Shown here: positions 13,137-52,053 of the stretch, piece by piece
Layout of the letters: each line of letters opens with the position of its first letter
Position numbering within the stretch: the stretch's first letter is position 1
IMG/VR virus record: IMGVR_UViG_3300028558_000016
Location: 124,001 to 188,000 of that record
Reading direction: 5' to 3' (one strand)
Length of the DNA: 64,000 nt
Translations under genes and position numbers: made by a program
The notes under the pieces: generated by a model
Told to the model about the DNA's origin: nothing
The model's database searches: none
Seen by the model: the letters and a program-made list of their open reading frames with translations, nothing else

Positions 13137-13544
13137 ATGAGCAAGATCAAATTATACGAAGAATACTTCAACGAGAGCATCACAAAGTTTGATGATTTTG
13201 GAAAAGATAAAGACCCAAAAGAAGGTCACGAAGCTGAATTAGGCGTCGACAACGATAAGGATGAACTCGAGCCTGAAGAAGATGATGACGATGAGAATCA
13301 CCTTGAAGAAGGTGCTGATCCATTAGTCGTTACATCTAAGGACACGATGAGAATTCAAGACATTCAAAGAAAATCAAACGGCAACATGGACAAAGCTAAG
13401 AAATTAGCTCAGACTATGTGCAAGCTTATCACCGATAAGTGGAAAGCAATAAGAAGAGCAAGAGCAGCTGAAAGAGAAAATGAACATGATCTTGCAGACA
13501 TCTTCTTTAACAGAGCAAAAGAACTTGGAGCATTTAGCAGCTAA
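13137..13544 (+). CDS. Leader-tagged (CTS-like) hypothetical protein
   Basis: Begins MSKIKLYEEYFNES; acidic linker then helical domain. Confidence 0.7.
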   Translation: MSKIKLYEEYFNESITKFDDFGKDKDPKEGHEAELGVDNDKDELEPEEDDDDENHLEEGADPLVVTSKDTMRIQDIQRKSNGNMDKAKKLAQTMCKLITDKWKAIRRARAAERENEHDLADIFFNRAKELGAFSS

Positions 13545-13858
13545 TGGAACACCTAAACGAATTTTCAGAATTCAATGAAGAAAAGGATACCAGGTATAAA
13601 GATCAATATGGTTATCTTGAATTCAACAAGGAAGGAAATCTAAGAGGTTTTGCTTCCGGATTTAAACTTCCAGCTTTCAAGAAATTCATAAAAGAATTTT
13701 CAGAAGCTAATTTGACAACAGGGTCAATAATCATTCCTTTTCAAGGAGGATATTTACCTACTAATCTTCCGAGCAAATACATAGAATCATATTATTGGAA
13801 GATGTCAAAAGAAAATGATATTAAAGACATAATGGCTTTATTGCCATTCAAATTTTAA
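13544..13858 (+). CDS. Leader-tagged hypothetical protein
   Basis: Begins MEHLNEFSEFNEE; TAATG coupling. Confidence 0.6.
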   Translation: MEHLNEFSEFNEEKDTRYKDQYGYLEFNKEGNLRGFASGFKLPAFKKFIKEFSEANLTTGSIIIPFQGGYLPTNLPSKYIESYYWKMSKENDIKDIMALLPFKF

Positions 13859-14640
13859 TGAAAAGAATCCTATCGTTTAATAATTTTCTCCTTGAAAGCG
13901 AGAAAGCAGTTGAACCTTCTTCGGAAGGTTCTTCTCCTATTGTGATAGTTGCTCCACATGCTGTGGAAGCTGATGACAAGAACACAAAAGAGATTGCAGA
14001 GGAATTGGCAAAGAACCTAAATGCTTTTCTTCTTATAAACGATAACTTCCATAAGCCAACAGACCAGAAGGACGATTCAACTGAGGACTTTAACCATTTA
14101 CCACCATCCAAAGATGGAAAATATGCATGGGACAAGCGTGTTCCTGAGATGAAAGCATTTTACGATAAGCTTGAGTCATTGGCAAAGAAAGCTTCCTCAT
14201 TAAGCAAGGATAACAACAAGAGATGTCTCGTTCTTTTCATACATGGATTGAGCCATGATAAATATGATATTGACCTTGGGGCTGGAGCAAAGTCAGCTCC
14301 TAACATGGTTATCAATGCAGAACAACACGTTAAAGCTAAAGACAATTCAGGTTCAATCACAGCACCAATAAAGTTTGTAGAGAATTTCAAAGAGATCTTA
14401 AAGAAAGAAGGTTTGAAGGTAGGAACTGGAGATGTATTCTCTGCTTGGGATGAACAGAACGGAACACAGTATTTAAGAAACATAGGAATGGATTGCTATT
14501 CAATCCAGATTGAGATCAACACTAACCTTCGAGATGATCCAAAGAAAACGGCCGAGTTGTTAAGCTCAGCCGTTAAACAGTTAAAAGATTTTTCTGAATC
14601 TATTTTTTATCTTCCGCAGGAAATTACTGCTCAGTCATAA
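13858..14640 (+). CDS. Leader-tagged Zn-carboxypeptidase-fold hydrolase (poly-gamma-glutamate hydrolase / N-formylglutamate amidohydrolase-like)
   Basis: Leader MKRILSFNNFLLES; IVAPHA, LFIHG, DIDLG, SIQIEI motifs. Confidence 0.6.
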   Translation: MKRILSFNNFLLESEKAVEPSSEGSSPIVIVAPHAVEADDKNTKEIAEELAKNLNAFLLINDNFHKPTDQKDDSTEDFNHLPPSKDGKYAWDKRVPEMKAFYDKLESLAKKASSLSKDNNKRCLVLFIHGLSHDKYDIDLGAGAKSAPNMVINAEQHVKAKDNSGSITAPIKFVENFKEILKKEGLKVGTGDVFSAWDEQNGTQYLRNIGMDCYSIQIEINTNLRDDPKKTAELLSSAVKQLKDFSESIFYLPQEITAQS

Positions 14641-14980
14641 AGATCATGTGCATGTTGTCGCTTCCGTCAACAAATAATTCATGACAAATGATGTTTTCAA
14701 ATTTAGATGCAGCTTTTTCTGATTTAAGTTCAAGAACATTAGAACCTTCAGAAAGATTTCCAATTTGTTTTAATTTAAAGTCAATAGTTTTCTTGTTGCT
14801 TCTTTCAGCATAGCCAAGACTAACAATCACTTCCTTTTTCGATTCGAGATATTCAATCCCAATACTTTTAGGATCAACTTTTGGTTGAGCTGCAAATTTC
14901 TTCAGCTCTTTAGTTAAGCTTTTTGAAAGCTTTCCTTCTTCAAGTGTTCCTTGAAAGATTTTAAATTTACTGTGAGACAT
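14624..14980 (-). CDS. Hypothetical protein
   Basis: 118 aa ORF with upstream TATATTTA box at 15008-15015 (minus). Confidence 0.65.
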   Translation of the reverse strand: MSHSKFKIFQGTLEEGKLSKSLTKELKKFAAQPKVDPKSIGIEYLESKKEVIVSLGYAERSNKKTIDFKLKQIGNLSEGSNVLELKSEKAASKFENIICHELFVDGSDNMHMIFMTEQ

Positions 14981-15043
14981 GTTTTATATGGTTTTATAGA
15001 TTTAACGTAAATATACAAATTACTATTGATACTAAAAAATTTA

Positions 15044-15283
15044 TTATTTTAGTATACGAGTAACGACCTTTTTGGTAAATTTTATTCTGAATCTCACAAT
15101 TACGAAATATTTAAAATAAATAACCCATCTTACGGATTCTGGTGAAATTTCGTAATTACTCCACACGTGCCATTCTCCTTTTGAATGGCACATTTCATTA
15201 ACGAAAATGGTTTTACATTTTCCATTATATCCGGTTGGATTAGAACAACAATTGTAACGACATTTATTTCTTTTCACAATCAA
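15044..15283 (-). CDS. Hypothetical protein
   Basis: 79 aa ORF overlapping upstream stop by 4 nt. Confidence 0.45.
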   Translation of the reverse strand: MIVKRNKCRYNCCSNPTGYNGKCKTIFVNEMCHSKGEWHVWSNYEISPESVRWVIYFKYFVIVRFRIKFTKKVVTRILK

Positions 15284-15993: not shown

Positions 15994-15994
15994 C

Positions 15995-16610: not shown

Positions 16611-16611
16611 T

Positions 16612-21637: not shown

Positions 21638-23062
21638 ATGAACATTCAAGACGAAAAAATATTAGCCGGAGTCGTTCTCGGCTTTGAGTGGGAATTTTAT
21701 TCCAACAAGACCAGACATGAGATTGCTAAGGAAGTAGGATCAATCGTGAAGAAAAAGATCAAGGTCGGCGACATGTATCACTCAGAGACCGAAATTGGTG
21801 ACAACGTTTGGAAGATCGAACCAGATTTCTCAGGTGGAATAAGAATGGTTGAGCTCATCACTGAGCCGATGCCATACCACGAAGCGATTGCAACACTGTT
21901 CAAGGTTTTAACCTGGATGAGAGAGAACGCATGGACAGACGAGAAGTGCGCTTTGCACGCCAACATATCATTTGACAAGTTCAAGCTCACAGACATGAAG
22001 GACAGAATTGAAGCCATCAACAGATTGAAATTCGTTCTTGGATTCGACGAGGATTTCGTTTACGAAAGATTCCCTAAGAGAAAGACTTCCATCTACGCGA
22101 GAAGCATCAACAGCATATTTCCTATTAACAAATTCGTATATGCAGACAACGTCGACACCATACACAAAGAAAATTACGAGCTTCCTTCTGAAAAGTATTT
22201 CGGAATTAACTTCTCGAAACTTGACAAGGAATACCTCGAGATAAGATACATGGGTGGAAGAGGCTATGAGAAGAAAGGTCACGCAGTTAAAGAGATAGTC
22301 GATTACGTTGCACTGTTCACATACAACACCCTTCAAAACAATTACACATACACGGCAGTTGAGGTTTCCAAATTAAAGAATGCAATGAAGGACTACCAAA
22401 AAGTGGTTCAATCTTTTTCTGACATCGACGCATTCTTCTTGAACTATCCAAACATAAGACTCTTCGTGGATCTAAAAGGAGAACGTGAAGTTCTTAAAAC
22501 CTTCTGGACCAAATTAAGAGACCAATTATTCGATTTAATAGTTCGATGCGGAATGAGAAGAGGAATGATCAACTATGACGCTGATGTCGCAAGATACCAG
22601 GTAAAGGATGCCATTCTTCAAAAGGCTTTCCCCATCAGAGGAATGGAAATATTCGATTGCAAGATACATTCAGGAAACATCCTGGAATGCGATCTGTATC
22701 GTTGTGAGATAACTAACGCTCATATTTTAGATTCAAATCTCTATTCAGGAAACAACGTCAAGAAGAGCAAGATCATCAACACGCCATTCCACTCATACAA
22801 CGAATGCAGCGACACTTACATAGACAACAAGAAGCACATCATCAACGGAAAGGTTGAGAGAGGCATCATTCGTTCAGGTGACATCGGTCCAACTGCAAAA
22901 ATCTCAAAAGAGACGGAAGTCATTCAGGCAATCCTGGATGGAAAAGATCACAAGGACACTCCAGGAAAACAAGGTGGTCCATCAAGACAAGGTGGAAAAG
23001 ATAAGGACATGCCAAGAACAAATCCAGGTTTCAAATTCAAGATGCCTCAAAATGAAAAATAG
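21638..23062 (+). CDS. Putative amidoligase (COOH-NH2 ligase type 2) with C-terminal beta-repeat extension
   Basis: GFEWEF, WKIEPDFS, ELITEPM, CALHANIS, KYFGINF, LEIRYMGG. Confidence 0.75.
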   Translation: MNIQDEKILAGVVLGFEWEFYSNKTRHEIAKEVGSIVKKKIKVGDMYHSETEIGDNVWKIEPDFSGGIRMVELITEPMPYHEAIATLFKVLTWMRENAWTDEKCALHANISFDKFKLTDMKDRIEAINRLKFVLGFDEDFVYERFPKRKTSIYARSINSIFPINKFVYADNVDTIHKENYELPSEKYFGINFSKLDKEYLEIRYMGGRGYEKKGHAVKEIVDYVALFTYNTLQNNYTYTAVEVSKLKNAMKDYQKVVQSFSDIDAFFLNYPNIRLFVDLKGEREVLKTFWTKLRDQLFDLIVRCGMRRGMINYDADVARYQVKDAILQKAFPIRGMEIFDCKIHSGNILECDLYRCEITNAHILDSNLYSGNNVKKSKIINTPFHSYNECSDTYIDNKKHIINGKVERGIIRSGDIGPTAKISKETEVIQAILDGKDHKDTPGKQGGPSRQGGKDKDMPRTNPGFKFKMPQNEK

Positions 23063-23411
23063 AATATTCAGATATGAGAACTTTCTAAACGAGGATGAGC
23101 ATCCATCGGTGGATGTTGCTGGAATTGGAAAGGTGAGATTATACTCTGAGATGAACGACTATCACTCTGGGCAATCCTACATGGTCACATACGCATTAGG
23201 ACCAAACGATGATGAGCTTGGACATTGCGACTGGAGCGAGTACAACAAGGAGATAAGCATTGAGATGATGGAAGTTAAGGAGCAATACAGAAGAAAAGGA
23301 ATAGCAAGTCTTTTGATGAACACCATAAAAGAGACCAATCCTGGTCAGAAAATTAATTATGGATATTCAACAGAGGATGGAACAAAATGGCTCCAGAAAT
23401 ACAATATATAG
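23052..23411 (+). CDS. Leader-tagged GNAT acetyltransferase
   Basis: Leader MKNRIFRYENFLNED; motif A EVKEQYRRKGIASLLM; STEDG. Confidence 0.75.
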   Translation: MKNRIFRYENFLNEDEHPSVDVAGIGKVRLYSEMNDYHSGQSYMVTYALGPNDDELGHCDWSEYNKEISIEMMEVKEQYRRKGIASLLMNTIKETNPGQKINYGYSTEDGTKWLQKYNI

Positions 23412-23414: not shown

Positions 23415-23756
23415 ATGAAGCATATTAAATTATTTGAAAATTTTTTAAACGAGGATGAAGACGACTTAACAGGATTAAAAGCTCCTGGAATAAAAGGTCT
23501 TTATTTTAGTCATGGTTCAGATTACGGAGATCATTACGTCGTTGTCACATATAAAAAGCCTTTCTTTGGAAAGGCATTGTTGACTAACGGCGACCATAAA
23601 TTTACGTTCGTTCAAACAGCTAAAAGACCAAGACGCGGAAATTGGTTCGATGAGAACAAAAAAGAAGTAACTGACGAAACTCTTCTTGATGCATTAACGT
23701 ACTTCATCAATGCGCAAGGAGATAAAGAAATAGCATCACTAACATCAGGATCATGA
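23415..23756 (+). CDS. Leader-tagged hypothetical protein
   Basis: MKHIKLFENFLNED. Confidence 0.8.
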   Translation: MKHIKLFENFLNEDEDDLTGLKAPGIKGLYFSHGSDYGDHYVVVTYKKPFFGKALLTNGDHKFTFVQTAKRPRRGNWFDENKKEVTDETLLDALTYFINAQGDKEIASLTSGS

Positions 23757-24103
23757 AGCATATTAAATTATTTGAAAATTTTCTTAACGAGAAGGAATAC
23801 ACCGCTGGTGACAATAAAGAATATGCCAAGTATTTGATGGATGCTTTCAAAGATGACGATTCCAATGATACAAACAATGCGCATTTCAAGGAAGTAAAAC
23901 GATATTACGAAACAGGACATTATGGTTCAGAGTCTTCCAATAAAGGAAAAGACATGAGACCTAAAGAAGTTCAAATAGCTGGAGATAAATTTTGGCTAAC
24001 GGAAAAATACAAGGATCTCAAAAGAACGATGTCCTTATATGGAGCACGTGAAATAGACCTTTTGAGTTACGAAGAATATTTTAAAGAACACCGCTTATCA
24101 TAA
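23753..24103 (+). CDS. Leader-tagged hypothetical protein
   Basis: MKHIKLFENFLNEK; first 30 nt identical to 23415 gene. Confidence 0.8.
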   Translation: MKHIKLFENFLNEKEYTAGDNKEYAKYLMDAFKDDDSNDTNNAHFKEVKRYYETGHYGSESSNKGKDMRPKEVQIAGDKFWLTEKYKDLKRTMSLYGAREIDLLSYEEYFKEHRLS

Positions 24104-24119: not shown

Positions 24120-24851
24120 ATGACAGAGAAAGCAATGATACAAGAAATTCAGAACGAGATACAATTATCTTGTGCTTTACCTTATGCCTTACCAGAGGCT
24201 GAAGTGAAGAGGATCATTAACAGAGCAAAGGAATGGTTTTGGGTAAACTACCAATGGGCAGTTGAAGAAAAGCTCATGGCAATTCCAAAAGAAGTATTTG
24301 AGCACGAGAGCTTTAGAAACACAAGATTGATTCAGCTTCCAGATTGCATCGTCTCTGTTTACGAATTTAAAGAAGTAACCGGAATAGGTTTGATAGGAAC
24401 TCCAGACAGAGACTTCTCAGATTCCAAATTATTAGGAGCTGAAATATTTTTATCTCCTTTCCAAGGAGACAACCTCGTTTACAGAACAGCAATGTACTCT
24501 TATTTCGATTTGGCCAAAGCTTACTTGCTTGAGACCATCGCATACAAATACAATAGAAACACAAAGAGAATGTCTGTGCTTGGAAGAAATCCATTCAGAG
24601 ATACTTTCATAAGAGTTGCAACAAAGATTCCAGATGAGACTTTATATGATGACGAAATCTTCGTGAGATATTGTTTGGCTCAGGCTAAGATTAATCTTGG
24701 TAGAATCTTACAGTTATTTAATTACAATTTGCCTGGAGGAATTCAAGTGAACTTTGATACAACAAAACAAGATGGTCTTTCAGAAATGGAAGCAATCAAG
24801 GCACAGATCGATGGTGAAAACACCGCAGACTGGTTTATCCAATGGAACTAA
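24120..24851 (+). CDS. Neck / head-tail adaptor protein (T4 gp13-like)
   Basis: YCLAQAKINLGRIL....NLPGGIQVNFD....G..EMEAIK resembles the gp13 C-terminal motif. Confidence 0.75.
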   Translation: MTEKAMIQEIQNEIQLSCALPYALPEAEVKRIINRAKEWFWVNYQWAVEEKLMAIPKEVFEHESFRNTRLIQLPDCIVSVYEFKEVTGIGLIGTPDRDFSDSKLLGAEIFLSPFQGDNLVYRTAMYSYFDLAKAYLLETIAYKYNRNTKRMSVLGRNPFRDTFIRVATKIPDETLYDDEIFVRYCLAQAKINLGRILQLFNYNLPGGIQVNFDTTKQDGLSEMEAIKAQIDGENTADWFIQWN

Positions 24852-24858: not shown

Positions 24859-25320
24859 ATGAAAAGACTAAAAACATACGCTGAACTCAACGAGAAGTTC
24901 AAATTCTCTGGAACATGCGATGGACCATTATGCGCCATCATTCCTTCTCTTGAAAAGATCGGAGACCTTGTGGATCACCAAGACACTCCTCAAGACCTCT
25001 TAAAAATGCAGGCTGAGACTAACAAGATCTTGGCAATGATCAACGCTGAAATAAAGGCAACAATCAACACACATTCTGAAGATGGTATTGATTGGGAAAA
25101 AGCTCCTTTGGCTCCTGTATTCATTTTGAATCTTGCTAAGAAATATCCTCAGCACGAACAAGCATACCACGATCTTTGGTACAAGGCTGTAAAAAGAATG
25201 GAAGAAAAGTTTTCTTACGGTGGAGCAATAGCCATCTTCAAAACATATTGCAAGAGAGAAGAACACAAATTGATGTTGGAAGAACACGATTATGGTCAGG
25301 ACGATACTATTATTGATTAA
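24859..25320 (+). CDS. Leader-tagged hypothetical protein (start revised)
   Basis: MKRLKTYAELNEK. Confidence 0.7.
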   Translation: MKRLKTYAELNEKFKFSGTCDGPLCAIIPSLEKIGDLVDHQDTPQDLLKMQAETNKILAMINAEIKATINTHSEDGIDWEKAPLAPVFILNLAKKYPQHEQAYHDLWYKAVKRMEEKFSYGGAIAIFKTYCKREEHKLMLEEHDYGQDDTIID

Positions 25321-25639
25321 CATTCTGTTTGGAGCTGCGATTTTTTCTCAGACTCCACAACAGAAGCAGATAAATGCACAGCAGTTTTATGCGGCAGCAG
25401 GAATTTCTATAATATCGTCAGAGTTATCGTTTCAATTGAACGACAGGATGGGATTGAGCTGTGCAATTGGAATTGGATCTGGACTTGCATACACTGGACT
25501 CAGAAGATTAGCAGACAAGAAATACGATTGCATCACCTCAGGTTGGGGTAACATATTAGGGACTGTTGGAATTGCATGTTACATGGATTTCAGAAAAAGG
25601 AAAAGAAAAGAAATAAAAGACGCATACAAAAAATCATGA
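25292..25639 (+). CDS. Membrane/exported protein
   Basis: Signal peptide plus hydrophobic Gly-rich segments. Confidence 0.55.
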   Translation: MVRTILLLINILFGAAIFSQTPQQKQINAQQFYAAAGISIISSELSFQLNDRMGLSCAIGIGSGLAYTGLRRLADKKYDCITSGWGNILGTVGIACYMDFRKRKRKEIKDAYKKS

Positions 25640-25938
25640 AGCACATTAAGCAGTTAAACCTAAATGAGGCACACGTCGAAAGGATAAAGATGCCAATGGG
25701 CCTTTCTCATAAAGGAGATGCAATATTAGGAACAGATAAGTTCTGGATGGTATATGTTTTTCAATCTCCAGACGGAAAAAGAAGATTCAAGAGCATCAGC
25801 AACGAGGCACAGACGATGCAAAACCTTGTCAACTTGATAAGAGGCGGAACAGAAGCAAATGAAATAGCAGGAATTTTTAAGGACCAGAAAGATGCTCAGG
25901 ATCTTTTTAATGAGCTTAAATATGAACCAGAAAGATAA
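25636..25938 (+). CDS. Leader-tagged hypothetical protein (start revised)
   Basis: MKHIKQLNLNEA; ATGA overlap. Confidence 0.7.
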   Translation: MKHIKQLNLNEAHVERIKMPMGLSHKGDAILGTDKFWMVYVFQSPDGKRRFKSISNEAQTMQNLVNLIRGGTEANEIAGIFKDQKDAQDLFNELKYEPER

Positions 25939-26630
25939 TGAGACTAAAATTATTTGAAGAATTCGACGAAGACTATTTCAAAAAGACATTGGAATACTTA
26001 TTCCTCGATAAAAAATATAAGGCCAAGAGAACCGGTGAAACGGTCTTAAGCATGGGATCAACTAAGTCTTTTCCAAAAGAAGCCGTTGGCAAAACGTTCT
26101 TTGTAGAGAATGGAATTGGTTACGAATTTGAGGTAAAAGTTCTCGACGCTGAGGGCAATGCGAAGTATAGAATGATATATCCGTTTCGCGAACCTCCTTT
26201 GAAAGAATCAGTTGAATACACAAAAGAGAATCCGGTAAACGTGAATTACCCAAGAGTAATTCCTCGTGACCTATTCAATGAGGCAAAGCTTTTAAAATGC
26301 ATTGGAAAAGTAGTTCTTTATATACATGACAACGACATTCCCGAAGGTTTTGGAATGTCCTTGGATGCAAGCGGAAAAAGAAGTATAGAATCACGCGACC
26401 ATGGATTCAGCAGCAAGCCGTTCAAGATCGGACTGATGAATGATGGAAGTTTGACCATCACAAATTTAGAAATATTCATAAATGGTGTTTCTTGTGTTTT
26501 TAAGACAACATATAACAGCAAGTCTAACTGGCCCTTGTTTTTGGAATATGAATTAACCGATTACCCAGTGTTCACAGAAGAAGGAAAGTTCGATGAAGAG
26601 TTTATAGAAATAGCAAAAACGATAAAATGA
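25938..26630 (+). CDS. Leader-tagged two-domain hypothetical protein
   Basis: MRLKLFEEFDED; internal PLKES. Confidence 0.75.
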   Translation: MRLKLFEEFDEDYFKKTLEYLFLDKKYKAKRTGETVLSMGSTKSFPKEAVGKTFFVENGIGYEFEVKVLDAEGNAKYRMIYPFREPPLKESVEYTKENPVNVNYPRVIPRDLFNEAKLLKCIGKVVLYIHDNDIPEGFGMSLDASGKRSIESRDHGFSSKPFKIGLMNDGSLTITNLEIFINGVSCVFKTTYNSKSNWPLFLEYELTDYPVFTEEGKFDEEFIEIAKTIK

Positions 26631-26896
26631 ACCACATAAAACTATTTGAGGAATTCACTCTAAATGAGGTGAAGCTTAAGAAGCCAAAAGAAGCTTGGTT
26701 CAAAGAAACCAGCGATTATTGGAAGACCGTGAAGGATGCAAAGGTGATTGTCACTGACGAATATTTTTCAAACGGAGAAGGCCATTACAAGGGATATTGG
26801 AAGGACGATCCAACAAAAAAGTTTGACCTTCCAGATGTATTCTTCATGGATGCAGAACTTCAAGCATGGTTAGATAAAAATTCAAAAAAGAAATAA
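26627..26896 (+). CDS. Leader-tagged hypothetical protein
   Basis: MNHIKLFEEFTLNEV. Confidence 0.78.
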   Translation: MNHIKLFEEFTLNEVKLKKPKEAWFKETSDYWKTVKDAKVIVTDEYFSNGEGHYKGYWKDDPTKKFDLPDVFFMDAELQAWLDKNSKKK

Positions 26897-26897: not shown

Positions 26898-27173
26898 ATG
26901 GACCACATTATCAAAAATTTCTTCGATTTCCTAAACGAAGCAGAACACAAAGCTCCGTTGGATTATACGACAATGAAGATCGGAGACACTCTCGTCAATC
27001 CAGATGGAACACCTTGGACAGAACAAGATAAATCAAAGATAGTCGTTCTCAACAAGGGAATAGCCTTAATTGAAGAAAATTTCGTTGACATAATAATTAA
27101 GACCGTTCTTGGTAAAGAAGAAAGATTCACAATCTCAAAAACGAACTTAAAAGAAATAGCAAAGAATCTGTAA
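26898..27173 (+). CDS. Leader-tagged hypothetical protein
   Basis: MDHIIKNFFDFLNEA. Confidence 0.75.
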   Translation: MDHIIKNFFDFLNEAEHKAPLDYTTMKIGDTLVNPDGTPWTEQDKSKIVVLNKGIALIEENFVDIIIKTVLGKEERFTISKTNLKEIAKNL

Positions 27174-28064: not shown

Positions 28065-28321
28065 TGAAACACGTAAAATTATTTGAAGAATTCGATAACG
28101 AGGAACTGCTCGTTAAAGATCTCGAGAACCTTGGATGGGAATTAGCAAGCTTAGCTCCTAACACTGATCCACGTTTCACTAAGGGCGAACTCCAATTGGT
28201 GACCAATGAGCCTGACATGAAATATGAGGTTCAGGACATCAAAGGAAAACACACCGACAAGGACGTTGATGCTGAAACGAAATCAGTCCTACACAAACAT
28301 AAATTAGAGAGATTCAAATAA
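28064..28321 (+). CDS. Leader-tagged hypothetical protein
   Basis: MKHVKLFEEFDNEE. Confidence 0.78.
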   Translation: MKHVKLFEEFDNEELLVKDLENLGWELASLAPNTDPRFTKGELQLVTNEPDMKYEVQDIKGKHTDKDVDAETKSVLHKHKLERFK

Positions 28322-28584
28322 TGAAACACTTAAAGATTTTTGAAAACTTTAATGGACCTGTTTACAGCGGCGGAAACGTAACTAAGATGCCAGTGATCGG
28401 AACCATAACAACTCTTCCTATGGAGTTCGGAGATTTTAAAATAGCTGCTGGCACGGAAGAAGTAGTTGAGATCATAGATGCTCCTAACGGGAAAAAATGT
28501 TATGTATGCAACAGATGGAACAAGCCAGGAATTCCTCAGTTAGTTCACGAGGACATGGTAGAAAAATATGAGCCAAAGAAATGA
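28321..28584 (+). CDS. Leader-tagged hypothetical protein
   Basis: MKHLKIFENFN. Confidence 0.78.
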   Translation: MKHLKIFENFNGPVYSGGNVTKMPVIGTITTLPMEFGDFKIAAGTEEVVEIIDAPNGKKCYVCNRWNKPGIPQLVHEDMVEKYEPKK

Positions 28585-36492: not shown

Positions 36493-38253
36493 ATGGCAAC
36501 CACCTCAACAAATAGCACACCGTCACTCGTCATGTTCCAGAAGAGCAGACTTGCGATAGAGCTTCTCATAAAGGATACGATCGAATATACGGTAACGACT
36601 TTCAAGCAAGGAAGAACAAACTTCACCGTGGCTTCTGCCTATGGTCAGATCATATTCGTTACGCAAAACATCGCACAGCTCATACTATATTACATCGAAG
36701 ATTCCATCACGGAATTAAACATAAGAACTGCGACAAGGTCAAACTCAGTTTATGGAATTGCTACTCTTGCAGGGCACAATCCAACAAGAGCTGTTGGTGC
36801 AACCGGCGAGATAAGTCTTCTTGCAAAGAATCCAGGAACTACAGACATCCCAAGCGGAATAGTCGTAATTCCTAACTTCACAAAGATCAAGTGTAAGAAC
36901 AACGGATTGGATTACATCATAGATCTTCCAACTGACGACATAAGAGTTTCTGCAAACGGAAACAATAACGGAATATCGATGGGAATAATTCAAGGAACCA
37001 TTGAGACCCAGACGTTCACAGGAACTGGAGAGCCTCTTCAATCCGTAAGTGCAAGCATTCAACAGACCGCATTGGTAGATAACTTCTTCGTAAACGTTTA
37101 TGTGAACGGAGAGAAGTGGAAGAAGTATGATTCGATTTATGACATTCCAAGAAATGGAAAAGGTTACATAATCAAAAATGGCATCACAAGCGGAATAGAC
37201 GTTTTCTTTGGTAACACAAACTTTGGATTACAACCAGTATTAGGTGCAGAAATAAACGTTGAGTATCTTGTTACATCAGGTCAAACTGGAAACATAACTC
37301 TCACCGATACTGAGGAAGCTCTTTACGAATGGACCGACACAGGCTTCACGATATTCGGAGATGACGTTGACTTGAACGAAACTTTCTTGATCAAGAACGT
37401 TAACGCACCAGATTTTGGAACAAATCCAGAACCTCTCGCATTGACGAGACTCGTTGCTCCTAAAGTTTCGAGAAGCTTGGTTCTTGCAAATCCAGACAAC
37501 TACATAATTTTCTTTGAGAAGTTTAATTTATTTTCCATCATAGACGCGTTCTCAACTCCAGGAGACAACAACATAGATGACGACAACGTGATCTACGTAT
37601 TTTTAATTCCAGATGTTAGAAAGAGAATGAAGAGCAACGAGAATTATTTCACCATCGAAGAAAGCAGATTTGTTTTAAGCACTAACCAAAAGAATAAAGT
37701 TCTTGATTACATCGAGAGAAGCGGTTCAAAGATCGTTACGACTATCGTGACTTTGATAGATCCTGTTTTCAGCAGATACGTGATTAACATTGCGTTGATC
37801 ATCTTTCAAGGACACTCAGAAGAGAGCATCAGACAGGCAGTGTTGCAAAGGCTTTCCGATTACTTCATTCAGATAAGAAGAAGAGACAGAATACCAAGAT
37901 CGGATTTAATTTCAATAATAGAAGGAATTGATGGAATTGACACAGTCAACATCAGCATAGTTTCAGAAAGAGATGAGCTTGATTTCATAAAATGGAGCGA
38001 GCTTACCGATGCACAAAAGCTTACGATACCTCAACCGACTCCAACAGCGTTGGACGAGTTTGGAGACATCATAATCAAGCAGAGGGATCTTCCAATAATC
38101 AAAGGTGGTTGGGACGATAGAAGAGGAATCACTTATGAGACTGGAATAAACGAGGATAAACCTTCTGCAGTTAATATAATAATAAAAGACGTTGTTCCAA
38201 AGACTTACAACACGGATTTTAATGCCAACACAAAATCAGATCTTAGGGGATAA
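36493..38253 (+). CDS. Baseplate wedge protein (T4 gp6 / baseplate J-like)
   Basis: ELNIRTATRSNSVYGIATLAGHNPTRA, VYVNGEKW, VFFGNTNFG..P..GAEINVEYL.TSG..GN. Confidence 0.8.
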   Translation: MATTSTNSTPSLVMFQKSRLAIELLIKDTIEYTVTTFKQGRTNFTVASAYGQIIFVTQNIAQLILYYIEDSITELNIRTATRSNSVYGIATLAGHNPTRAVGATGEISLLAKNPGTTDIPSGIVVIPNFTKIKCKNNGLDYIIDLPTDDIRVSANGNNNGISMGIIQGTIETQTFTGTGEPLQSVSASIQQTALVDNFFVNVYVNGEKWKKYDSIYDIPRNGKGYIIKNGITSGIDVFFGNTNFGLQPVLGAEINVEYLVTSGQTGNITLTDTEEALYEWTDTGFTIFGDDVDLNETFLIKNVNAPDFGTNPEPLALTRLVAPKVSRSLVLANPDNYIIFFEKFNLFSIIDAFSTPGDNNIDDDNVIYVFLIPDVRKRMKSNENYFTIEESRFVLSTNQKNKVLDYIERSGSKIVTTIVTLIDPVFSRYVINIALIIFQGHSEESIRQAVLQRLSDYFIQIRRRDRIPRSDLISIIEGIDGIDTVNISIVSERDELDFIKWSELTDAQKLTIPQPTPTALDEFGDIIIKQRDLPIIKGGWDDRRGITYETGINEDKPSAVNIIIKDVVPKTYNTDFNANTKSDLRG

Positions 38254-39458: not shown

Positions 39459-39983
39459 ATGAAACACATCAAACTATTTGAAGAACAAACAACCCACAGC
39501 AAGATTCTTTTCTTACATGGTCTTGATTCAAGACCTTATGAGGACAGACTTGCAATATTAAAGGAAACAGGCGCAGAAGTATTTGCTCCACACATCAACT
39601 ACAGGCAAGAAGACGAAACTTCAATTGCAGAAGACATCATCGAAAAAGAAGGAATAACTCATCTAATAGGACACTCATTGGGTGGAATACTTTCTTTCTA
39701 CCTTTCAAACAAACACAAGCTTCCTGCATTGATGTTCAACCCTGCATTTGGATCCATCAACAGAAAATATTTTGAGGAGATAAGAGAGCTTCAACAATAT
39801 CCTCCATTTGAAGAACAATACGCTGTCGTAGGTTTAAAGGACACAGTCATTCCTCCGGATGTTCAATTGGCAGGATTAAAACACGCACACGTGTTTGAAG
39901 AACCAGAAATGCCTCACACTATAGAACCAAAGCTATTTAAGAAGTACGTTGAATTATTTTCGGAAAAAACCAACATCAAGTGA
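39459..39983 (+). CDS. Leader-tagged alpha/beta hydrolase (YqiA/YcfP-like esterase)
   Basis: MKHIKLFEEQ; LFLHGLDS, IGHSLGG, LMFNPA, G.KDTVI, MPH. Confidence 0.85.
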   Translation: MKHIKLFEEQTTHSKILFLHGLDSRPYEDRLAILKETGAEVFAPHINYRQEDETSIAEDIIEKEGITHLIGHSLGGILSFYLSNKHKLPALMFNPAFGSINRKYFEEIRELQQYPPFEEQYAVVGLKDTVIPPDVQLAGLKHAHVFEEPEMPHTIEPKLFKKYVELFSEKTNIK

Positions 39984-40681
39984 AACACATAAAAGATTAT
40001 AACAAATTATTCGAGAACGAAAAGCCAATCATATCTTACGATTTTGACGGGTGTCTTCACGTTTCTGTTGTTGGACACGATCCAATTAACTTCACAGATC
40101 CTGAATCATGGGTTCCATTTACAGAGATGCACGAACAAATGAGAGAGGATGCAAAGACTCACACCATCGTCATTTGCACGGCAAGACCTCCTGAAACCGA
40201 AGTTTACGTTCAAGAATTTCTTGACATGTACAAGCTTCCGGTTGAAAAGATTTACGCAACAAACAATTTTCCAAAGACTCCTCTTCTCGTTGAGATTGGA
40301 GCCATAAAACATTACGACGACAACACTGGGCTCATTGAACCTTTACATAAAGCAGGAATAGAATTCGTTCTCGTCAACCCGTTCAACAGAACTCAACAGG
40401 TAATGGAAGGTGAAATACCTTTAAAAAATTACTTGATAACATTCATAAACGATAAGTTTTACATATCAGACAACACCATCAAAGCGTTCTTAGACAGGCT
40501 GGTTAAGCTTGACCCACACATGACGCATGACCCAAGAAGCGATGGAAAAGGAAAAAATTCAAGAGGAATAGTGATTAGAAGCGCAGCATTGAGTCAGCCT
40601 GACATCAAGGATTTATTTCCAGAATTCACCAAGAAGTATGATTGGTTGAAGATGGAGGTCGTAGCCACCAAATATATGTAG
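39980..40681 (+). CDS. Leader-tagged HAD-family phosphatase
   Basis: GTG start MKHIKDYNKLFENE; ISYDFDGCL, ICTAR, HYDDN. Confidence 0.8.
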   Translation: MKHIKDYNKLFENEKPIISYDFDGCLHVSVVGHDPINFTDPESWVPFTEMHEQMREDAKTHTIVICTARPPETEVYVQEFLDMYKLPVEKIYATNNFPKTPLLVEIGAIKHYDDNTGLIEPLHKAGIEFVLVNPFNRTQQVMEGEIPLKNYLITFINDKFYISDNTIKAFLDRLVKLDPHMTHDPRSDGKGKNSRGIVIRSAALSQPDIKDLFPEFTKKYDWLKMEVVATKYM

Positions 40682-43977: not shown

Positions 43978-44259
43978 ATGAGACACATAAAGCTTTTTGA
44001 AGCATATAATGCTGACAAGGTCCAAAGCGAATACGATGACATCATGGACGGTGCCGGTTGGGCAACTGATGGATACATCGATAATTTTTCCCCATTAAAC
44101 AAAGAAGAAAAGTATCAGCTTATGCTTAAGTTAGCAAAGAGTGGAAAACTTTTTGACGAAGATATTATTGGAGACGATGATAGTGGCGAAATGCCGAAGA
44201 AGGGTAAGATGTCTGTCAAAGACGTTGAAGAGAATTGGTCGTACTCCAAGAAAAAATAA
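43978..44259 (+). CDS. Leader-tagged hypothetical protein
   Basis: MRHIKLFEAYN; RATATATA 4 nt upstream. Confidence 0.78.
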   Translation: MRHIKLFEAYNADKVQSEYDDIMDGAGWATDGYIDNFSPLNKEEKYQLMLKLAKSGKLFDEDIIGDDDSGEMPKKGKMSVKDVEENWSYSKKK

Positions 44260-47479: not shown

Positions 47480-47564
47480 ATCGCATGCTCTATTATTAGA
47501 GACATTATACAAACTCCAACAAGAAGTCCTAAGTAAAATGCTGCAAAAAGATTTTTATTTTCCA

Positions 47565-49469: not shown

Positions 49470-49478
49470 GTTTTATTT

Positions 49479-49670: not shown

Positions 49671-49671
49671 A

Positions 49672-50145: not shown

Positions 50146-50456
50146 TAGTTATAAATAAATTTACGGTTCATTGAAGCTGCCATATCAACAAGCATGGAAG
50201 TTTCTCCGATGGTGTTCACGAATTTTCCATGAAGCCTGCGATCCTTTTTCATGAGTTTTTCCATTTCATCCATTTGTTTGGTGTTCTCGAAAAATTCCGC
50301 CTGTTCGCGTAACTCATGATGTTTTTTTCTGATGCTGATTTGATTCTCAACATTTTTTACTAAAGACTTCATCACGTCTTCTTTTTTTACTGGTTTTACA
50401 TTCGACAGCATTTCTAACAATGCAATTATCGGATGATTTTGATTTTGTTTTCTCAT
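50145..50456 (-). CDS. Hypothetical protein
   Basis: First gene of minus block; TATATTTA box at 50480-50487. Confidence 0.6.
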   Translation of the reverse strand: MRKQNQNHPIIALLEMLSNVKPVKKEDVMKSLVKNVENQISIRKKHHELREQAEFFENTKQMDEMEKLMKKDRRLHGKFVNTIGETSMLVDMAASMNRKFIYN

Positions 50457-50639
50457 GGTTGGTTGTTTTAATTTATATGTAAATATACTAACTTTTTTCC
50501 ATATATAAAAATGATTCTTATAACTTATTGATAATCAAGCAGTTACGTTTTCCATTATACCTCGATTTCCTAATGGATTTAAGGCTTCAATCATCATTAA
50601 ATTTTGGCGAATATATACATAAACTAAAACTAATCATAC

Positions 50640-51359
50640 ATGGCTATAGTCATCACAGAGATTCTTGGCACTGACCCGTTTAGCGGTTCGAGAATCGTAA
50701 TAAACGCAAACTTCCAATCATTAAAAACTGAAGTGGAAGCGCTGGAATCTAATCTCGGGATTAGCGTTGCATCAGGAAATATTGACATTTCTGCAGCGAT
50801 AGGTGGACAAATAAAAGCAAAAGTTGGAGCATTCAATAACATCCAACTTCCAGTAGCAGGAATTCCAAACATCACGCTTACCGGATCGACCGGAGCAATA
50901 GTTGGAAAAACGTTAACTCTTGCCACATCGGCAGTAATTCCAACGCTAACAGCAGACAATTTTACAGCCACCGCACTCGGACAAAGCATCTTCAATGGTG
51001 AAGCAACTTTCAACGCGTTAGTAAAGGTTACAGACGGTCTTGCTTACAACAAAGTAAACGTTGGAACAGTGAGCACTCACACGGTAATAAATTCAGACAG
51101 AGTGATTCTTTTCACATTGAACGTTTTATCACCAGGTGCTCTCGTCATAACTCCAGATGCTCAGTTGGTTGATGGTCACGTGGTAACCCTCGTTGACACA
51201 AGCAACGTGGCAACAACACTTGATACAACATTCATCATGGGAACTTGGGGTTCCATTACATTCGCTGCTGATGGTTACAAATCATGCATCACTTTAATGT
51301 GGAGCGTTGTAGATAACAAATGGATTATCATTGGTTCTTCAAATATGACAATTCTATAA
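50640..51359 (+). CDS. Virion structural protein (fibre/baseplate-associated)
   Basis: ITEILGTDPFSGSRIVINANF N-terminus; beta-rich; RATATATA upstream. Confidence 0.6.
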   Translation: MAIVITEILGTDPFSGSRIVINANFQSLKTEVEALESNLGISVASGNIDISAAIGGQIKAKVGAFNNIQLPVAGIPNITLTGSTGAIVGKTLTLATSAVIPTLTADNFTATALGQSIFNGEATFNALVKVTDGLAYNKVNVGTVSTHTVINSDRVILFTLNVLSPGALVITPDAQLVDGHVVTLVDTSNVATTLDTTFIMGTWGSITFAADGYKSCITLMWSVVDNKWIIIGSSNMTIL

Positions 51360-51724
51360 TGAAGCACATTAAGACGTATAACGAAGCTATCAACGAAGGA
51401 TGGTTGACTGATTGGCTCTTTAAAAGAACTTATAAGGTCAATTATACAACTGAACTTGTTGACAAGAAAACCAATGAACCGGTTTCTTATAAATCTTACT
51501 TGACTGTGAAGGCCAAGAACGAAGATGAAGCTCTCGAGAAATTTTATACCAAATGGGACGAGGCAATAAAAGGCTTTGACGTTGAACCTAAAGTCATAGT
51601 TGGAAATATAGTTAAAACAGACAAGGCAGATAAAATCAATATAGATCTTCCAAGATCCATACAGAAGATAAGCAAGGAAAAAGAAGTTAAAAAAGAAGTC
51701 AAAGACGACGAAAAGAAGAAATGA
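51359..51724 (+). CDS. Leader-tagged hypothetical protein (start revised)
   Basis: MKHIKTYNEAINEG; TAATG coupling. Confidence 0.75.
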   Translation: MKHIKTYNEAINEGWLTDWLFKRTYKVNYTTELVDKKTNEPVSYKSYLTVKAKNEDEALEKFYTKWDEAIKGFDVEPKVIVGNIVKTDKADKINIDLPRSIQKISKEKEVKKEVKDDEKKK

Positions 51725-52053
51725 AACACTTAAAGAGTTTTGAAAATCTTAATGAGAATGTCTTGCAAAACAAGCTGATTCCCATTTTTCCAGAAAATCC
51801 AACTTGGAAGTTAAGCGACTCGTGGGAAGGAAATGACGGAGACATTAATTTTTCTTTTACCAATGGACCTTTTGAAGTAACAGCAGAATTCTGGGATCCA
51901 ACAAGTACATACACCGTAGGTTTCAGAGAAACAGGAGACAAGTATTTAGTGCCTGAAGGAAAAAGGTATCAATCAGGAAATTTAAAAGATCTCGCAGAAG
52001 TTAAAAAAGAAATGTCCAAGATGATGGACTTCTTAGAAGAATACTCTAAATAA
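51721..52053 (+). CDS. Leader-tagged hypothetical protein
   Basis: MKHLKSFENLNEN. Confidence 0.78.
   Translation: MKHLKSFENLNENVLQNKLIPIFPENPTWKLSDSWEGNDGDINFSFTNGPFEVTAEFWDPTSTYTVGFRETGDKYLVPEGKRYQSGNLKDLAEVKKEMSKMMDFLEEYSK

What the first reader, a model, noticed from the sequence alone, without database searches (positions are those of the whole stretch)
13137..52053. About 33 unrelated ORFs share a capsid-targeting-like N-terminal leader (MKHIKLFENFLNE): a large tag-plus-cargo packaging system
Seen: ORFs at 13137, 13544, 13858, 23052, 23415, 23753, 24859, 25636, 25938, 26627, 26898, 27174, 28064, 28321, 28581, 28943, 29305, 29790, 32482, 32667, 33059, 33377, 33952, 34170, 34851, 35077, 35544 (variant), 36125, 39459, 39980, 43978, 51359 and 51721 start with M-(K/R)-x-(I/L/V)-K-x-(F/Y)-x-x-F, often followed by (L/I/M)-N-E. 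The domains after the leader are unrelated. All are on the plus strand, most are interleaved with neck/baseplate genes, and none are in the minus-strand accessory blocks. Known: T4 internal proteins IPII/IPIII start MKTYQEFIAE, which directs packaging into the prohead and is removed by gp21 protease after L/I-x-E. KLFENFLNE aligns position by position with KTYQEFIAE. T4 has three IPs, and IPI* inhibits the GmrSD nuclease. Inference: this phage packages dozens of diverse proteins through one portable tag and injects them as an early arsenal (anti-defence or host takeover), about ten-fold more than T4.
Basis: partly seen in the sequence, partly recalled or inferred. Interest (0 to 1): 0.92.

Follow-up and report, generated by a model that had tools for sequence, protein, structure and literature searches.

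The report
Shared capsid-targeting-like leader on 32 genes
In this piece of a 482-kb uncultured phage genome, 32 otherwise unrelated genes begin with the same 13-residue peptide, which closely resembles the tag phage T4 uses to load proteins into its head, so this phage probably packages dozens of different proteins into its capsid.

Summary
32 of the 33 listed ORFs start with M-K-H-I-K-L-F-E-x-F-(L/I/V)-N-E; the exception is 35544. All are on the plus strand. The parts after the leader show no detectable similarity to each other.

The conservation is in the peptide: codons vary synonymously and the upstream DNA differs.

The window comes from IMG/VR contig 3300028558_000016 (482 kb), a relative of the Lak/Mahaphage group, with a likely Bacteroidota host.

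The same leader heads well over 150 ORFs in other viral contigs but is almost absent from 596 Gb of cellular genomes.

Evidence linking it to T4's capsid targeting sequence (CTS):
- A blind tblastn against 50,697 phage genomes hit only the N-termini of internal head proteins of T4-like phage S16 (MKTYEEFINE).
- The window-trained model ranks all three T4 internal proteins in the top 1% of T4 ORF starts.
- Relatives encode a T4 gp21-type (S77) prohead protease.
- Relatives carry leader genes inside the head module.
- A late-promoter-like ATATATA motif heads both leader operons and structural genes.

Packaging, cleavage and injection remain inferred. The source genome's own protease could not be retrieved. 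I rate this a new, greatly expanded variant of a known mechanism.

The parts
13137..13544 (+). leader ORF, 135 aa, MSKIKLYEEYFNES; first gene of an operon behind an ATATATA motif
   Evidence: 23.1 bits
13544..13858 (+). leader ORF, 104 aa, MEHLNEFSEFNEEK; weak variant
   Evidence: 17.7 bits
13858..14640 (+). leader ORF, 260 aa, MKRILSFNNFLLES; cargo has a weak, sub-threshold poly-gamma-glutamate-hydrolase-like hit
23052..23411 (+). leader ORF, 119 aa, MKNRIFRYENFLNE; cargo is a GNAT acetyltransferase
   Evidence: Acetyltransf_1, 23.4 bits, cutoff 20.7
23415..23756 (+). leader ORF, 113 aa, MKHIKLFENFLNE; ATATATA 4 nt upstream
   Evidence: (31.7 bits)
23753..24103 (+). leader ORF, 116 aa, MKHIKLFENFLNE; weak DUF6037 hit
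24120..24851 (+). context: homologue of the gene annotated 'neck protein' in PTm1; no leader
   Evidence: 36% identity to LR756500.1, 25% to PTm1 ORF-002
24859..25320 (+). leader ORF, 153 aa, MKRLKTYAELNE
25636..25938 (+). leader ORF, 100 aa, MKHIKQLNLNE
25938..26630 (+). leader ORF, 230 aa, MRLKLFEEFDED; no N-E site
26627..26896 (+). leader ORF, 89 aa, MNHIKLFEEFTLNE
26898..27173 (+). leader ORF, 91 aa, MDHIIKNFFDFLNE
27174..28064 (+). leader ORF, 296 aa, MKFVKLFENFLNE; cargo domain (phrog_15575) occurs without a leader in Mimasvirus phages GAP32 and XbC2
28064..28321 (+). leader ORF, 85 aa, MKHVKLFEEFDNE
28321..28584 (+). leader ORF, 87 aa, MKHLKIFENFNGP; no N-E site
28581..28946 (+). leader ORF, 121 aa, MRIKLFEQFINE; very acidic cargo (net charge -15)
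28943..29305 (+). leader ORF, 120 aa, MKLKLFEQFVNE
29305..29790 (+). leader ORF, 161 aa, MKHISLFEAYKHEE
29790..30557 (+). leader ORF, 255 aa, MKYIKLFENWMNE
32482..32667 (+). leader ORF, 61 aa, MKNLKLFEAFFEE
32667..33059 (+). leader ORF, 130 aa, MKYVKLFEEFTDD; orthologue in L002
33059..33316 (+). leader ORF, 85 aa, MRIKDFKNFGLTE; weak leader, net charge -16; equals the C-terminal part of a 236-aa leader protein in L002
33377..33955 (+). leader ORF, 192 aa, MKYVKLFEGFLNE; its C-terminal domain (phrog_13953) sits directly behind a leader in L002
33952..34170 (+). leader ORF, 72 aa, MKNIKFFENYQENE
34170..34484 (+). leader ORF, 104 aa, MKHVKLYENFLNE
34486..34848 (+). context: weakly gp25-like baseplate wedge gene; no leader
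34851..35075 (+). leader ORF, 74 aa, MKNLKHFDELNE
35077..35535 (+). leader ORF, 152 aa, MKHIQPLNEAL; truncated leader
   Evidence: 18.8 bits
35544..36125 (+).
   Evidence: does not reach 8 bits
36125..36403 (+). leader ORF, 92 aa, MKHIKLFEEMNE
36493..38253 (+). context: baseplate wedge (gp6/Baseplate_J-like) gene behind an ATATATA motif
39459..39983 (+). leader ORF, 174 aa, MKHIKLFEEQTTHS; cargo is a UPF0227 alpha/beta hydrolase whose Pfam domain starts at residue 15
39980..40681 (+). leader ORF with GTG start, 233 aa, (M)KHIKDYNKLFENE; cargo is a HAD/PNK-phosphatase-like domain
43978..44259 (+). leader ORF, 93 aa, MRHIKLFEAYNAD; ATATATA 4 nt upstream; followed by PhoH
51359..51724 (+). leader ORF, 121 aa, MKHIKTYNEAINE
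51721..52053 (+). leader ORF, 110 aa, MKHLKSFENLNE
13109..13115 (+). ATATATA promoter-like motif heading the first leader operon. The same motif occurs at 7852, 21626, 23404, 32067, 36464, 40684, 43967, 50611 and 55242, each 4-26 nt before a + strand start
   Evidence: P about 1e-14 for 10 of 12 so placed

Best explanation
The 13-residue leader is a prohead-core (capsid) targeting propeptide of the T4 CTS type, extended by three residues at its N-terminus.

Proposed mechanism:
1. The leader genes are transcribed late, together with the structural genes.
2. The short amphipathic N-terminal peptide, with its two aromatic residues three positions apart, docks each tagged protein onto the assembling scaffold core inside the prohead.
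3. The gp21-type (Peptidase_S77) prohead protease then cuts after the Glu of [L/I/V]-N-E. This frees the mature protein inside the capsid, from where it can leave with the DNA at infection.
4. Members that lack the N-E site would be targeted but not processed at that position.

Because the tag is short and self-contained, it is recombined onto many different domain cassettes. This gives a large, fast-turning repertoire: 32 genes and 4,328 codons in this window.

Shown: the shared peptide-level tag, its modularity, its phage specificity, its resemblance to genuine CTSs, the protease and head-module association in relatives, and the shared promoter-like motif.

Inferred: docking, cleavage, encapsidation, injection and what the cargo does.
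For: 1. Tag on unrelated cargo.

2. Selection acts on the peptide. Synonymous codons vary, and substitutions are conservative (I/V/L, F/Y).

3. The four positions that matter in T4 are the best conserved here, as [FY]-x-x-[FYW]-[LIV]-x-E. In T4 these are CTS residues 4 and 7 for targeting and 8 and 10 for processing (PMC9026906). The pattern is complete in about 22-24 of the 32 leaders.

4. A blind tblastn of a 21-aa leader against 50,697 phage genomes returned only the N-termini of genes annotated internal virion or Ip4 protein in phage S16 and eight related records (E about 3). S16 gp71 and gp70.1 read MKTYEDFINEA and MKTYEEFINES.

5. The window-trained HMM ranks T4 ipIII, ipI and ipII 8th, 10th and 14th of 1,580 T4 ORF starts (P about 6e-7). 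It also ranks the three CTS-like ORFs first of 45 starts in the S16 region.

6. The clade encodes Peptidase_S77. In LR756500.1 and in leader-bearing IMG/VR loci the order is portal, S77 protease, MCP.

7. In those loci a leader ORF lies between the portal and protease genes, the position of T4 gp67/gp68. In about 30 of 80 MCP loci the gene right after the MCP is a conserved family with the leader MKRVKSYNEFITES. AlphaFold predicts it as all long helices with a low-confidence N-terminus.

8. The tag is an add-on:
- The Pfam UPF0227 domain starts at residue 15.
- The cargo domain of 27174 exists without a tag in GAP32 and XbC2.
- Domains are shuffled behind a constant leader between the window and its 76% relative L002.

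9. ATATATA precedes the sheath, tube, portal, protease and MCP genes in LR756500.1. In the window it heads both the leader operons and the baseplate and large structural genes.

10. The leader cluster between the neck and baseplate genes is syntenic in LR756500.1. That genome has its own variant (MKYIKEYEEFLNE, about 38 genes in 462 kb) and no shared cargo.
Against: - There are no proteomic or experimental data. No cultured phage with this leader was found, and the regions of PTm1 and MaF61 I examined lack it.
- The source genome's own protease, scaffold and MCP were not retrieved.
- The tblastn hits to S16 are individually non-significant (E about 3).
- T4 internal proteins score only 5.6-6.2 bits with the window model.
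- Most cargo here is acidic or neutral. From my own recollection, T4's IPs are basic.
- About 8-10 leaders lack the N-E site.
- The leader region also shows an A-rich codon bias, which is compatible with a translation-initiation effect.
- Sharing one docking site among 32 or more cargo species (about 38 tagged genes in the complete relative) implies low copy numbers per capsid. The capsid's capacity is unknown.
Confidence: 0.7

Rival explanations
1. The shared N-terminal helix is a docking peptide for some destination other than the capsid interior. Candidates are the tail or baseplate lumen, a phage chaperone or assembly factor, or a host hub protein. The tag-plus-cargo logic would hold but the address would differ.
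For: The largest cluster lies between the neck and baseplate genes in both huge phages. The docking partner is not identified. Many leaders lack a clear cleavage site.
Against: The closest known sequences are capsid targeting sequences. In relatives, leader genes lie between the portal and protease genes and directly after the MCP gene. The C-terminal [LIV]-x-E of the leader fits the gp21-type cleavage rule described in PMC9026906.
Confidence: 0.12
2. The leader is a translation-initiation or early-elongation enhancer. It would be an A/T-rich 5' coding ramp and a favourable nascent peptide for mRNAs without a Shine-Dalgarno sequence in a Bacteroidota host, and it would have no targeting role.
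For: No Shine-Dalgarno-like sequence is visible upstream. The leader is 72% A+T against 62% in the gene bodies, with AAA, CTA and TTA codons favoured. The phage encodes translation-related genes: tRNAs, aminoacyl-tRNA synthetases, SmpB and an S1-domain protein.
Against: - Conservation extends over 13 residues at the amino-acid level, with free synonymous variation for F, E, N, I and Y.
- The highly expressed structural genes on the same strand (baseplate, the 1193-aa protein and others) lack it.
- It is absent from cellular Bacteroidota genes.
- It matches T4-type CTSs from a Shine-Dalgarno-using host.
Confidence: 0.07
3. The leader is an N-terminal degron or regulatory tag that lets a protease or adaptor remove or control a whole class of phage proteins at a set time.
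For: It is strictly N-terminal, short, amphipathic and shared by unrelated proteins.
Against: There is no similarity-based support. Its association with head modules and a late-promoter-like motif fits assembly better than turnover. A conserved scaffold-like head-module protein carries it.
Confidence: 0.05
4. The conserved 5' end is mainly a recombination handle or a relic of serial duplication. It would let gene cassettes be swapped, and the peptide itself would have no function.
For: Domains are shuffled behind a constant leader between close relatives, and cargo turns over quickly.
Against: Nucleotide identity among the leaders is low because synonymous sites vary, which makes them poor substrates for homologous recombination. 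The amino-acid pattern is kept across distant contigs. This idea is compatible with a targeting function and does not replace it.
Confidence: 0.04

Closest known systems
Capsid targeting sequence (CTS) of the T4 and Tevenvirinae internal proteins (IPI, IPII, IPIII, Alt; S16 Ip4-type proteins)
   Same: - It is a short propeptide starting at Met1, shared by otherwise unrelated proteins.
- The pattern is aromatic-x-x-aromatic-aliphatic-x-Glu. S16 MKTYEEFINE and the consensus here, MKHIKLFE[EQN]F[ILV]NE, share the E-x-F-[IL]-N-E core.
- The clade encodes a gp21-type S77 protease.
- Cargo is diverse and poorly conserved between relatives (PMC3012670, PMC9026906).
   Different: - It is three residues longer at the N-terminus.
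- There are 32 tagged genes in 64 kb, and about 38 in a complete 462-kb relative, against three IPs in T4, plus Alt, which also carries a cleaved N-terminal propeptide.
- Cargo is mostly acidic or neutral and includes enzymes (GNAT, hydrolase, phosphatase).
- The lineage is distant (Mahaphage-related, likely Bacteroidota host).
- The tag is also on a conserved scaffold-like head-module protein.
- Cleavage and packaging are untested.
Head ejection and inner-body proteins of phiKZ-like giant phages (phiKZ, 201phi2-1, SPN3US)
   Same: These are very large phages with dozens of internal head proteins, processed by a diverged gp21 homologue that cuts after Glu (PMC5694885, PMC9026906).
   Different: Their propeptides are mostly over 100 residues and are not one short shared tag. 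Their cleavage motif is described as having very few determinants besides Glu. No leader of the present type is reported there.
Phage P1 Dar antirestriction proteins, which are loaded into the capsid
   Same: Defence-countering proteins are incorporated into heads during morphogenesis and delivered with the DNA (PMC9024508 and PMC12810830 as listed; the details are from my own knowledge).
   Different: There are few proteins, loading is ordered and hierarchical, and there is no common short N-terminal tag of this sequence.
Encapsulin cargo-loading peptides (established knowledge; not tested here)
   Same: A short portable peptide directs unrelated cargo enzymes into an HK97-fold shell.
   Different: The peptide is C-terminal and not cleaved, the shell is a cellular nanocompartment, and the sequences are unrelated.

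Membership tests
T4-type CTS / internal-protein packaging system | Short (10-19 aa) N-terminal propeptide starting at Met1, shared by otherwise unrelated proteins | tested here: met
   32 ORFs share a 13-aa leader. Cargo shows no pairwise similarity.
T4-type CTS / internal-protein packaging system | Targeting residues (CTS positions 4 and 7, aromatic) and processing residues (position 8 aliphatic, position 10 Glu) | tested here: met
   [FY]-x-x-[FYW]-[LIVM]-x-E is complete in about 22-24 of 32 leaders. The rest keep the aromatic pair but lack the Glu site. The rule is taken from PMC9026906.
T4-type CTS / internal-protein packaging system | Detectable sequence similarity to experimentally defined or annotated CTSs | tested here: met
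   The only tblastn hits in 50,697 phage genomes are the N-termini of S16-group internal virion proteins (E about 3). The window HMM puts the three T4 IPs in the top 14 of 1,580 starts (P about 6e-7). This is similarity of a very short motif. Common descent cannot be told apart from convergence.
T4-type CTS / internal-protein packaging system | A gp21-type prohead protease (Peptidase_S77) in the same genome | tested here: inconclusive
   It is present in the leader-bearing relatives LR756500.1, L085, L110, L123, L129 and L156. It is not in the 64-kb window. The rest of the 482-kb source contig could not be fetched.
T4-type CTS / internal-protein packaging system | Expression together with the head genes (late) | tested here: inconclusive
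   The shared ATATATA motif sits upstream of the leader operons and of structural genes, and upstream of the MCP, portal and protease genes in LR756500.1. There are no transcript data.
T4-type CTS / internal-protein packaging system | Proteolytic removal of the leader after the Glu during head maturation | not testable with these tools
   This needs N-terminal sequencing or mass spectrometry of virion proteins.
T4-type CTS / internal-protein packaging system | Mature proteins present inside virions and ejected into the host | not testable with these tools
   No cultured member and no proteome were found.
T4 IPI/IPII/IPIII protein families (homology of the cargo) | Mature domains homologous to T4 internal proteins | tested here: not met
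   No Pfam or PHROG family of internal head proteins matched any of the 33 proteins. Cargo hits are GNAT, UPF0227, HAD-like and unknown PHROGs.
Sec or lipoprotein signal peptides | Hydrophobic h-region of 7-15 residues, with a lipobox for lipoproteins | tested here: not met
   By direct reading, the leader is charged and amphipathic (K, H, K, E, N, E). Genuine signal or lipobox N-termini occur on other genes of the window, for example 17587-17985 (-) MKKIVLLIAISLMVSCG. No signal-peptide predictor was available.

The most novel reading that the evidence does not exclude
A whole clade of large and huge uncultured phages (Mahaphage-related, mostly Bacteroidota hosts) uses an extended T4-like capsid-targeting tag to load tens of different proteins per genome into the capsid and deliver them with the DNA. 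Much of the 'dark' small-gene content of these genomes would then be a rapidly shuffled, virion-delivered effector repertoire. The 13-residue leader would be a sequence marker that lists those effectors directly from metagenomes.
Probability: 0.5. Interest if true: 0.85.

Novelty: new variant of a known kind. Interest (0 to 1): 0.78.

Why it matters
Huge phages carry hundreds of small genes of unknown function, and nobody knows what most of them are for. If this leader is a capsid-targeting tag, it assigns a cellular address (packaged in the head, available at the first moment of infection) to more than half of the plus-strand genes in this region. It does the same for several percent of the genes of a complete 462-kb relative.

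It would extend a mechanism known from T4 and its close relatives to a distant, uncultured, globally distributed clade, at about ten times the scale. It would also show that the cargo set turns over by domain shuffling behind a constant tag, as expected for arms-race genes.

In practice, the leader gives a simple search key for candidate virion-delivered proteins (anti-defence, host takeover, host-modifying enzymes) in metagenomes. It is also a candidate portable packaging tag for phages of Bacteroidota.

Tried and rejected
- Megablast of 23000-36500 against GenBank phages found no match.
- Full-text searches for the leader strings (MKHIKLFE, KLFEQF, KLFEEF, KLFENF, KLFEDF) found no paper. Only the T4 CTS string was found, in a T4 vaccine-platform paper. 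No paper combined 'capsid targeting' with the megaphage, Lak or Mahaphage terms, and the huge-phage papers listed do not use the term.
- I guessed that MaF61 ORF139, next to the scaffold gene, might be the prohead protease. It has no PDB or phage hit and was dropped.
- I tried to fetch the source contig's head module with an MCP alignment and with the LR756500.1 protease.
- tblastn of the conserved after-MCP leader protein against GenBank phages found no match.
- hhalign of that family against T4 gp22 and against the clade's MCPs found no similarity. Calling it 'scaffold-like' therefore rests only on composition, position and the all-helical prediction.
- Foldseek of that model against BFVD gave only generic long-helix matches, none with E<=0.001.
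- Single-sequence AlphaFold of the 39459 hydrolase had mean pLDDT 51.7, too low to use. It says nothing reliable about the leader's conformation.
- Within- versus between-genome leader identity gave only a modest lineage signal (LR756500.1 0.52 within, 0.35-0.46 between). The way the loci were found also biases this comparison, so I do not claim co-evolution with a receptor.
- The conserved LINEAE at the N-terminus of the clade's MCPs looked like a cleavage site. It aligns with the uncleaved N-terminal region of T4 gp23, so I do not use it as evidence.

Full report
**Observation**

I built a profile from the leaders and scanned all 2,532 ATG/GTG/TTG starts with at least 25 codons, on both strands. 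It recovers 32 ORFs at 14 bits or more. No further ORF appears, and no minus-strand start reaches 10 bits.

In the span 13137-52053 the leader is on 32 of about 57 plus-strand genes and on none of 18 minus-strand genes. The tagged proteins total 4,328 residues and range from 61 to 296 aa. With the first 15 residues removed, no two of them are similar by blastp or phmmer at E<0.01.

**Peptide or nucleotide signal**

The 30 bases upstream of the start codons are not conserved and show no Shine-Dalgarno sequence.

Inside the leader the amino acids are kept while the codons vary: AAA/AAG, CAT/CAC, TTT/TTC, GAA/GAG, AAT/AAC, and five Leu codons. Synonymous usage for F, E, N, I and Y does not differ from the rest of the same genes (p>0.3). 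K, H and L lean towards A-rich codons, and the leader is 72% A+T against 62%.

So the conservation is at the protein level. An ordinary A/T-rich bias at the 5' end of the coding sequence lies on top of it.

**Where the window comes from**

The window is identical to part of IMG/VR contig IMGVR_UViG_3300028558_000016 (482,156 bp).

Its large proteins are most similar to these phages:
- the uncultured 462-kb phage LR756500.1
- the 540-735 kb Lak and other huge phages
- Tenacibaculum phages PTm1 and pT24
- Chryseobacterium MA9V
- Flavobacterium MaF61
- Sphingomonas PAU

Al-Shayeb et al. place Lak and the largest genomes in the Mahaphage clade, with predicted Bacteroidetes hosts (PMC7162821).

Three things fit a Bacteroidota host:
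- a SprB-repeat protein with a type IX secretion sorting domain (47565-49469, minus strand)
- lipoprotein-type N-termini
- the absence of Shine-Dalgarno sequences

The window also carries seven tRNA genes, an AlaRS fragment, a class II aminoacyl-tRNA synthetase, SmpB, an S1-domain protein, a Dda-like helicase, PhoH and DHFR.

Its structural genes are:
- a homologue of the gene annotated 'neck protein' in PTm1 (24120-24851)
- a weakly gp25-like gene (34486-34848)
- a gp6/Baseplate_J-like wedge gene (36493-38253)
- large proteins that are syntenic with LR756500.1

**How widespread the leader is**

Nearly all are at the starts of ORFs of 50-540 aa. The positions the pattern left free are strongly biased towards the same consensus: H or Y at 3, I/V/L at 11, N at 12 in 61 of 157, and E at 13 in 98 of 157. 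One stretch (L045) is from the source contig outside the window and holds two more leader genes.

The same pattern in 596 Gb of bacterial and archaeal genomes gave mostly short random-frame ORFs without those features. About a dozen look genuine, and the ones whose source I read are on contigs binned into Bacteroidota metagenome-assembled genomes. The leader is therefore a phage feature, not a host one.

The complete LR756500.1 genome, read in ten pieces, has about 38 ORFs with its own version, MKYIKEYEEF[IL]NE. They lie in clusters along the genome. One cluster sits between the neck and gp25-like genes, exactly where the window's largest cluster lies, yet none of the cargo is shared.

**Link to the T4 capsid targeting sequence**

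T4 internal proteins carry 10-19-residue N-terminal propeptides that target them to the scaffolding core and are removed by gp21. In the 10-residue CTS of IPIII, residues 4 and 7 matter for targeting and residues 8 and 10 for processing. Asp at position 10 blocks processing but not targeting (PMC9026906). The mature internal proteins are diverse and only the CTS is conserved (PMC3012670).

Aligned to this, the window's K-L-F-E-N-F-L-N-E puts F on Tyr4, F on Phe7, L on Ile8 and E on Glu10. These are the best conserved leader positions. The full pattern [FY]-x-x-[FYW]-[LIVM]-x-E is present in about 22-24 of the 32 leaders.

Two blind tests support the link:
- A tblastn of a 21-residue leader taken from an unrelated IMG/VR contig, run against 50,697 GenBank phage genomes, returned only nine records. 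All are the N-terminus of genes that several of the records annotate as internal virion or Ip4 protein, in Salmonella phage S16 and its relatives. S16 gp71 and gp70.1 read MKTYEDFINEA and MKTYEEFINES, sharing E-x-F-I-N-E with the leader. The E-value (about 3) is not significant on its own. The identity of the hits is what counts.
- The profile trained only on the window ranks T4 ipIII, ipI and ipII 8th, 10th and 14th among 1,580 T4 ORF starts (hypergeometric P about 6e-7). It ranks the three CTS-like ORFs first among 45 starts in the S16 region.

**Head-assembly context in relatives**

LR756500.1 and several leader-bearing IMG/VR loci have a T4-like head module in this order: portal, a 630-675-aa protein whose N-terminal part is a Peptidase_S77 (gp21-type) prohead protease, and a gp23-like major capsid protein.

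In L110, L123, L129 and L156 a leader ORF of 114-215 aa lies between the portal and protease genes. T4 has its prohead core genes 67 and 68 in that position.

In 80 loci fetched through the capsid protein there are 67 leader hits, 65 of them on the capsid gene's strand; the other two are alternative starts of one ORF. In about 30 loci the gene right after the capsid gene belongs to one conserved family starting MKRVKSYNEFITES or MKKIKLLEQFLEE. That family is rich in Ala, Lys and Glu. AlphaFold predicts it as a chain of 20-38-residue helices with a low-confidence N-terminal 27 residues (mean pLDDT 73). This looks like a scaffolding or core protein, but no homology to T4 gp22 could be shown.

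The source genome's own head module could not be retrieved. The presence of the protease in this particular phage is therefore inferred from its relatives.

**Modularity**

The leader is an addition to complete domains:
- In the alpha/beta hydrolase at 39459, the Pfam UPF0227 model starts at residue 15.
- The HAD-type phosphatase at 39980 has the leader ahead of its first strand and DxD motif.
- The domain in 27174 occurs in Mimasvirus phages GAP32 and XbC2 without any such N-terminus, among methyltransferase genes.

I compared the window with contig L002, whose baseplate protein is 76% identical. Only five of its 14 leader proteins have a counterpart here, and two of those are rearranged. The C-terminal 83 residues of 33377 are the entire cargo of a 93-aa L002 protein, directly behind its own leader. 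The protein at 33059 corresponds to the C-terminal part of a 236-aa L002 leader protein.

Recognisable cargo is limited to a GNAT acetyltransferase (23052), the hydrolase, the phosphatase and two PHROGs of unknown function. Many cargo proteins are acidic, with net charge down to -16.

**Expression**

ATATATA occurs 12 times in the window, always on the plus strand. Ten of these lie 4-26 nt before a plus-strand start codon (P about 1e-14 under random placement).

It heads the leader operons at 13137, 23415 and 43978. It also heads the baseplate wedge gene and the large structural genes at 7864, 40696, 50640 and 55275. In LR756500.1 the same motif precedes the sheath, tube, portal, protease and capsid genes. 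A weakly gp55-like gene sits in the same module in relatives.

I read this as a late-type promoter shared by leader genes and virion genes. That is an inference from sequence only.

**Conclusion**

The best explanation (confidence about 0.7) is that the leader is a prohead-core targeting propeptide of the T4 CTS type. It is three residues longer and is cleaved after [L/I/V]-N-E by the clade's S77 protease. The 32 tagged genes would then encode proteins loaded into the capsid.

Whether they are injected effectors, internal structural proteins, or both is open.

Rivals are not excluded, but each fits less of the evidence:
- another docking destination
- a translation-enhancing N-terminus
- a degron
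- a recombination handle

Compared with what is known, this is the T4 mechanism in a distant uncultured clade, with an extended tag and roughly ten times more tagged genes. I found no description of it in the searchable literature.

Noticed in passing
window 39-1928, 929-1720, 2571-3836, 3887-4309: Translation module: seven tRNA genes (Asp, four Glu, two Ala), an AlaRS-like fragment, a class II (D/K/N) aminoacyl-tRNA synthetase and SmpB. One tRNA-Glu (757-843) is 87 nt long.
   Followed up: partly
window 7852, 13109, 21626, 23404, 32067, 36464, 40684, 43967, 50611, 55242: ATATATA lies 4-5 or 20-26 nt upstream of plus-strand start codons. The same motif precedes the sheath, tube, portal, protease and MCP genes in LR756500.1. 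It is probably the late promoter core of this clade.
   Followed up: partly
window 45033-50456 and 14624-18682, minus strand: The minus-strand blocks carry host-like genes: a 634-aa SprB-repeat protein with a type IX secretion C-terminal sorting domain, several lipoprotein or signal-peptide proteins, DHFR and a metallophosphoesterase. None has the leader.
   Followed up: partly
window 18813-19937: A 374-aa protein with three S1 RNA-binding domains, in a phage whose genes lack Shine-Dalgarno sequences.
   Followed up: no
window 58874-64000: A giant ORF (at least 1,709 aa) starts at 58874 and runs off the end of the window, so the ORF listing does not show it.
   Followed up: no
window 5737-6618: A 293-aa protein has a weak, sub-threshold match to the T4 Gp23 major capsid family (E 0.007).
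   Followed up: no
T4 NC_000866, gene 61.1 (start 19130, minus strand): The 54-aa hypothetical protein gp61.1 starts MKTFKEFIKE, a CTS-like N-terminus. It ranks third of 1,580 T4 ORF starts with the window-trained model, above the known internal proteins.
   Followed up: no
L285:20007, L110:4214 (-), L156:3382 (-), L085:9778: The major capsid proteins of this clade start M-x-(x)-L-I-N-E-[AS]-E, which resembles the end of the leader. It aligns with the N-terminal region of T4 gp23, which lies upstream of the annotated gp21 cleavage region, so its meaning is unclear.
   Followed up: partly
L060 (IMGVR_UViG_3300020048_000015, 182,728 bp): Five paralogous genes on both strands share the leader plus the next 12 residues (MKYLKLFENFNQSEIDEICRKYNI). 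This is a true paralogue family, unlike the unrelated cargo in the window.
   Followed up: no
L285:18061-19959, L110:4310-6328 (-): In this clade the S77 prohead protease domain is the N-terminal third of a 630-675-aa protein, possibly a protease-scaffold fusion.
   Followed up: no
L282:278 (Salmonella phage S16): A third ORF in the S16 region, overlapping the annotated gp74.3/74.2, starts MKTYQEFINES. It may be an unannotated CTS-bearing protein.
   Followed up: no
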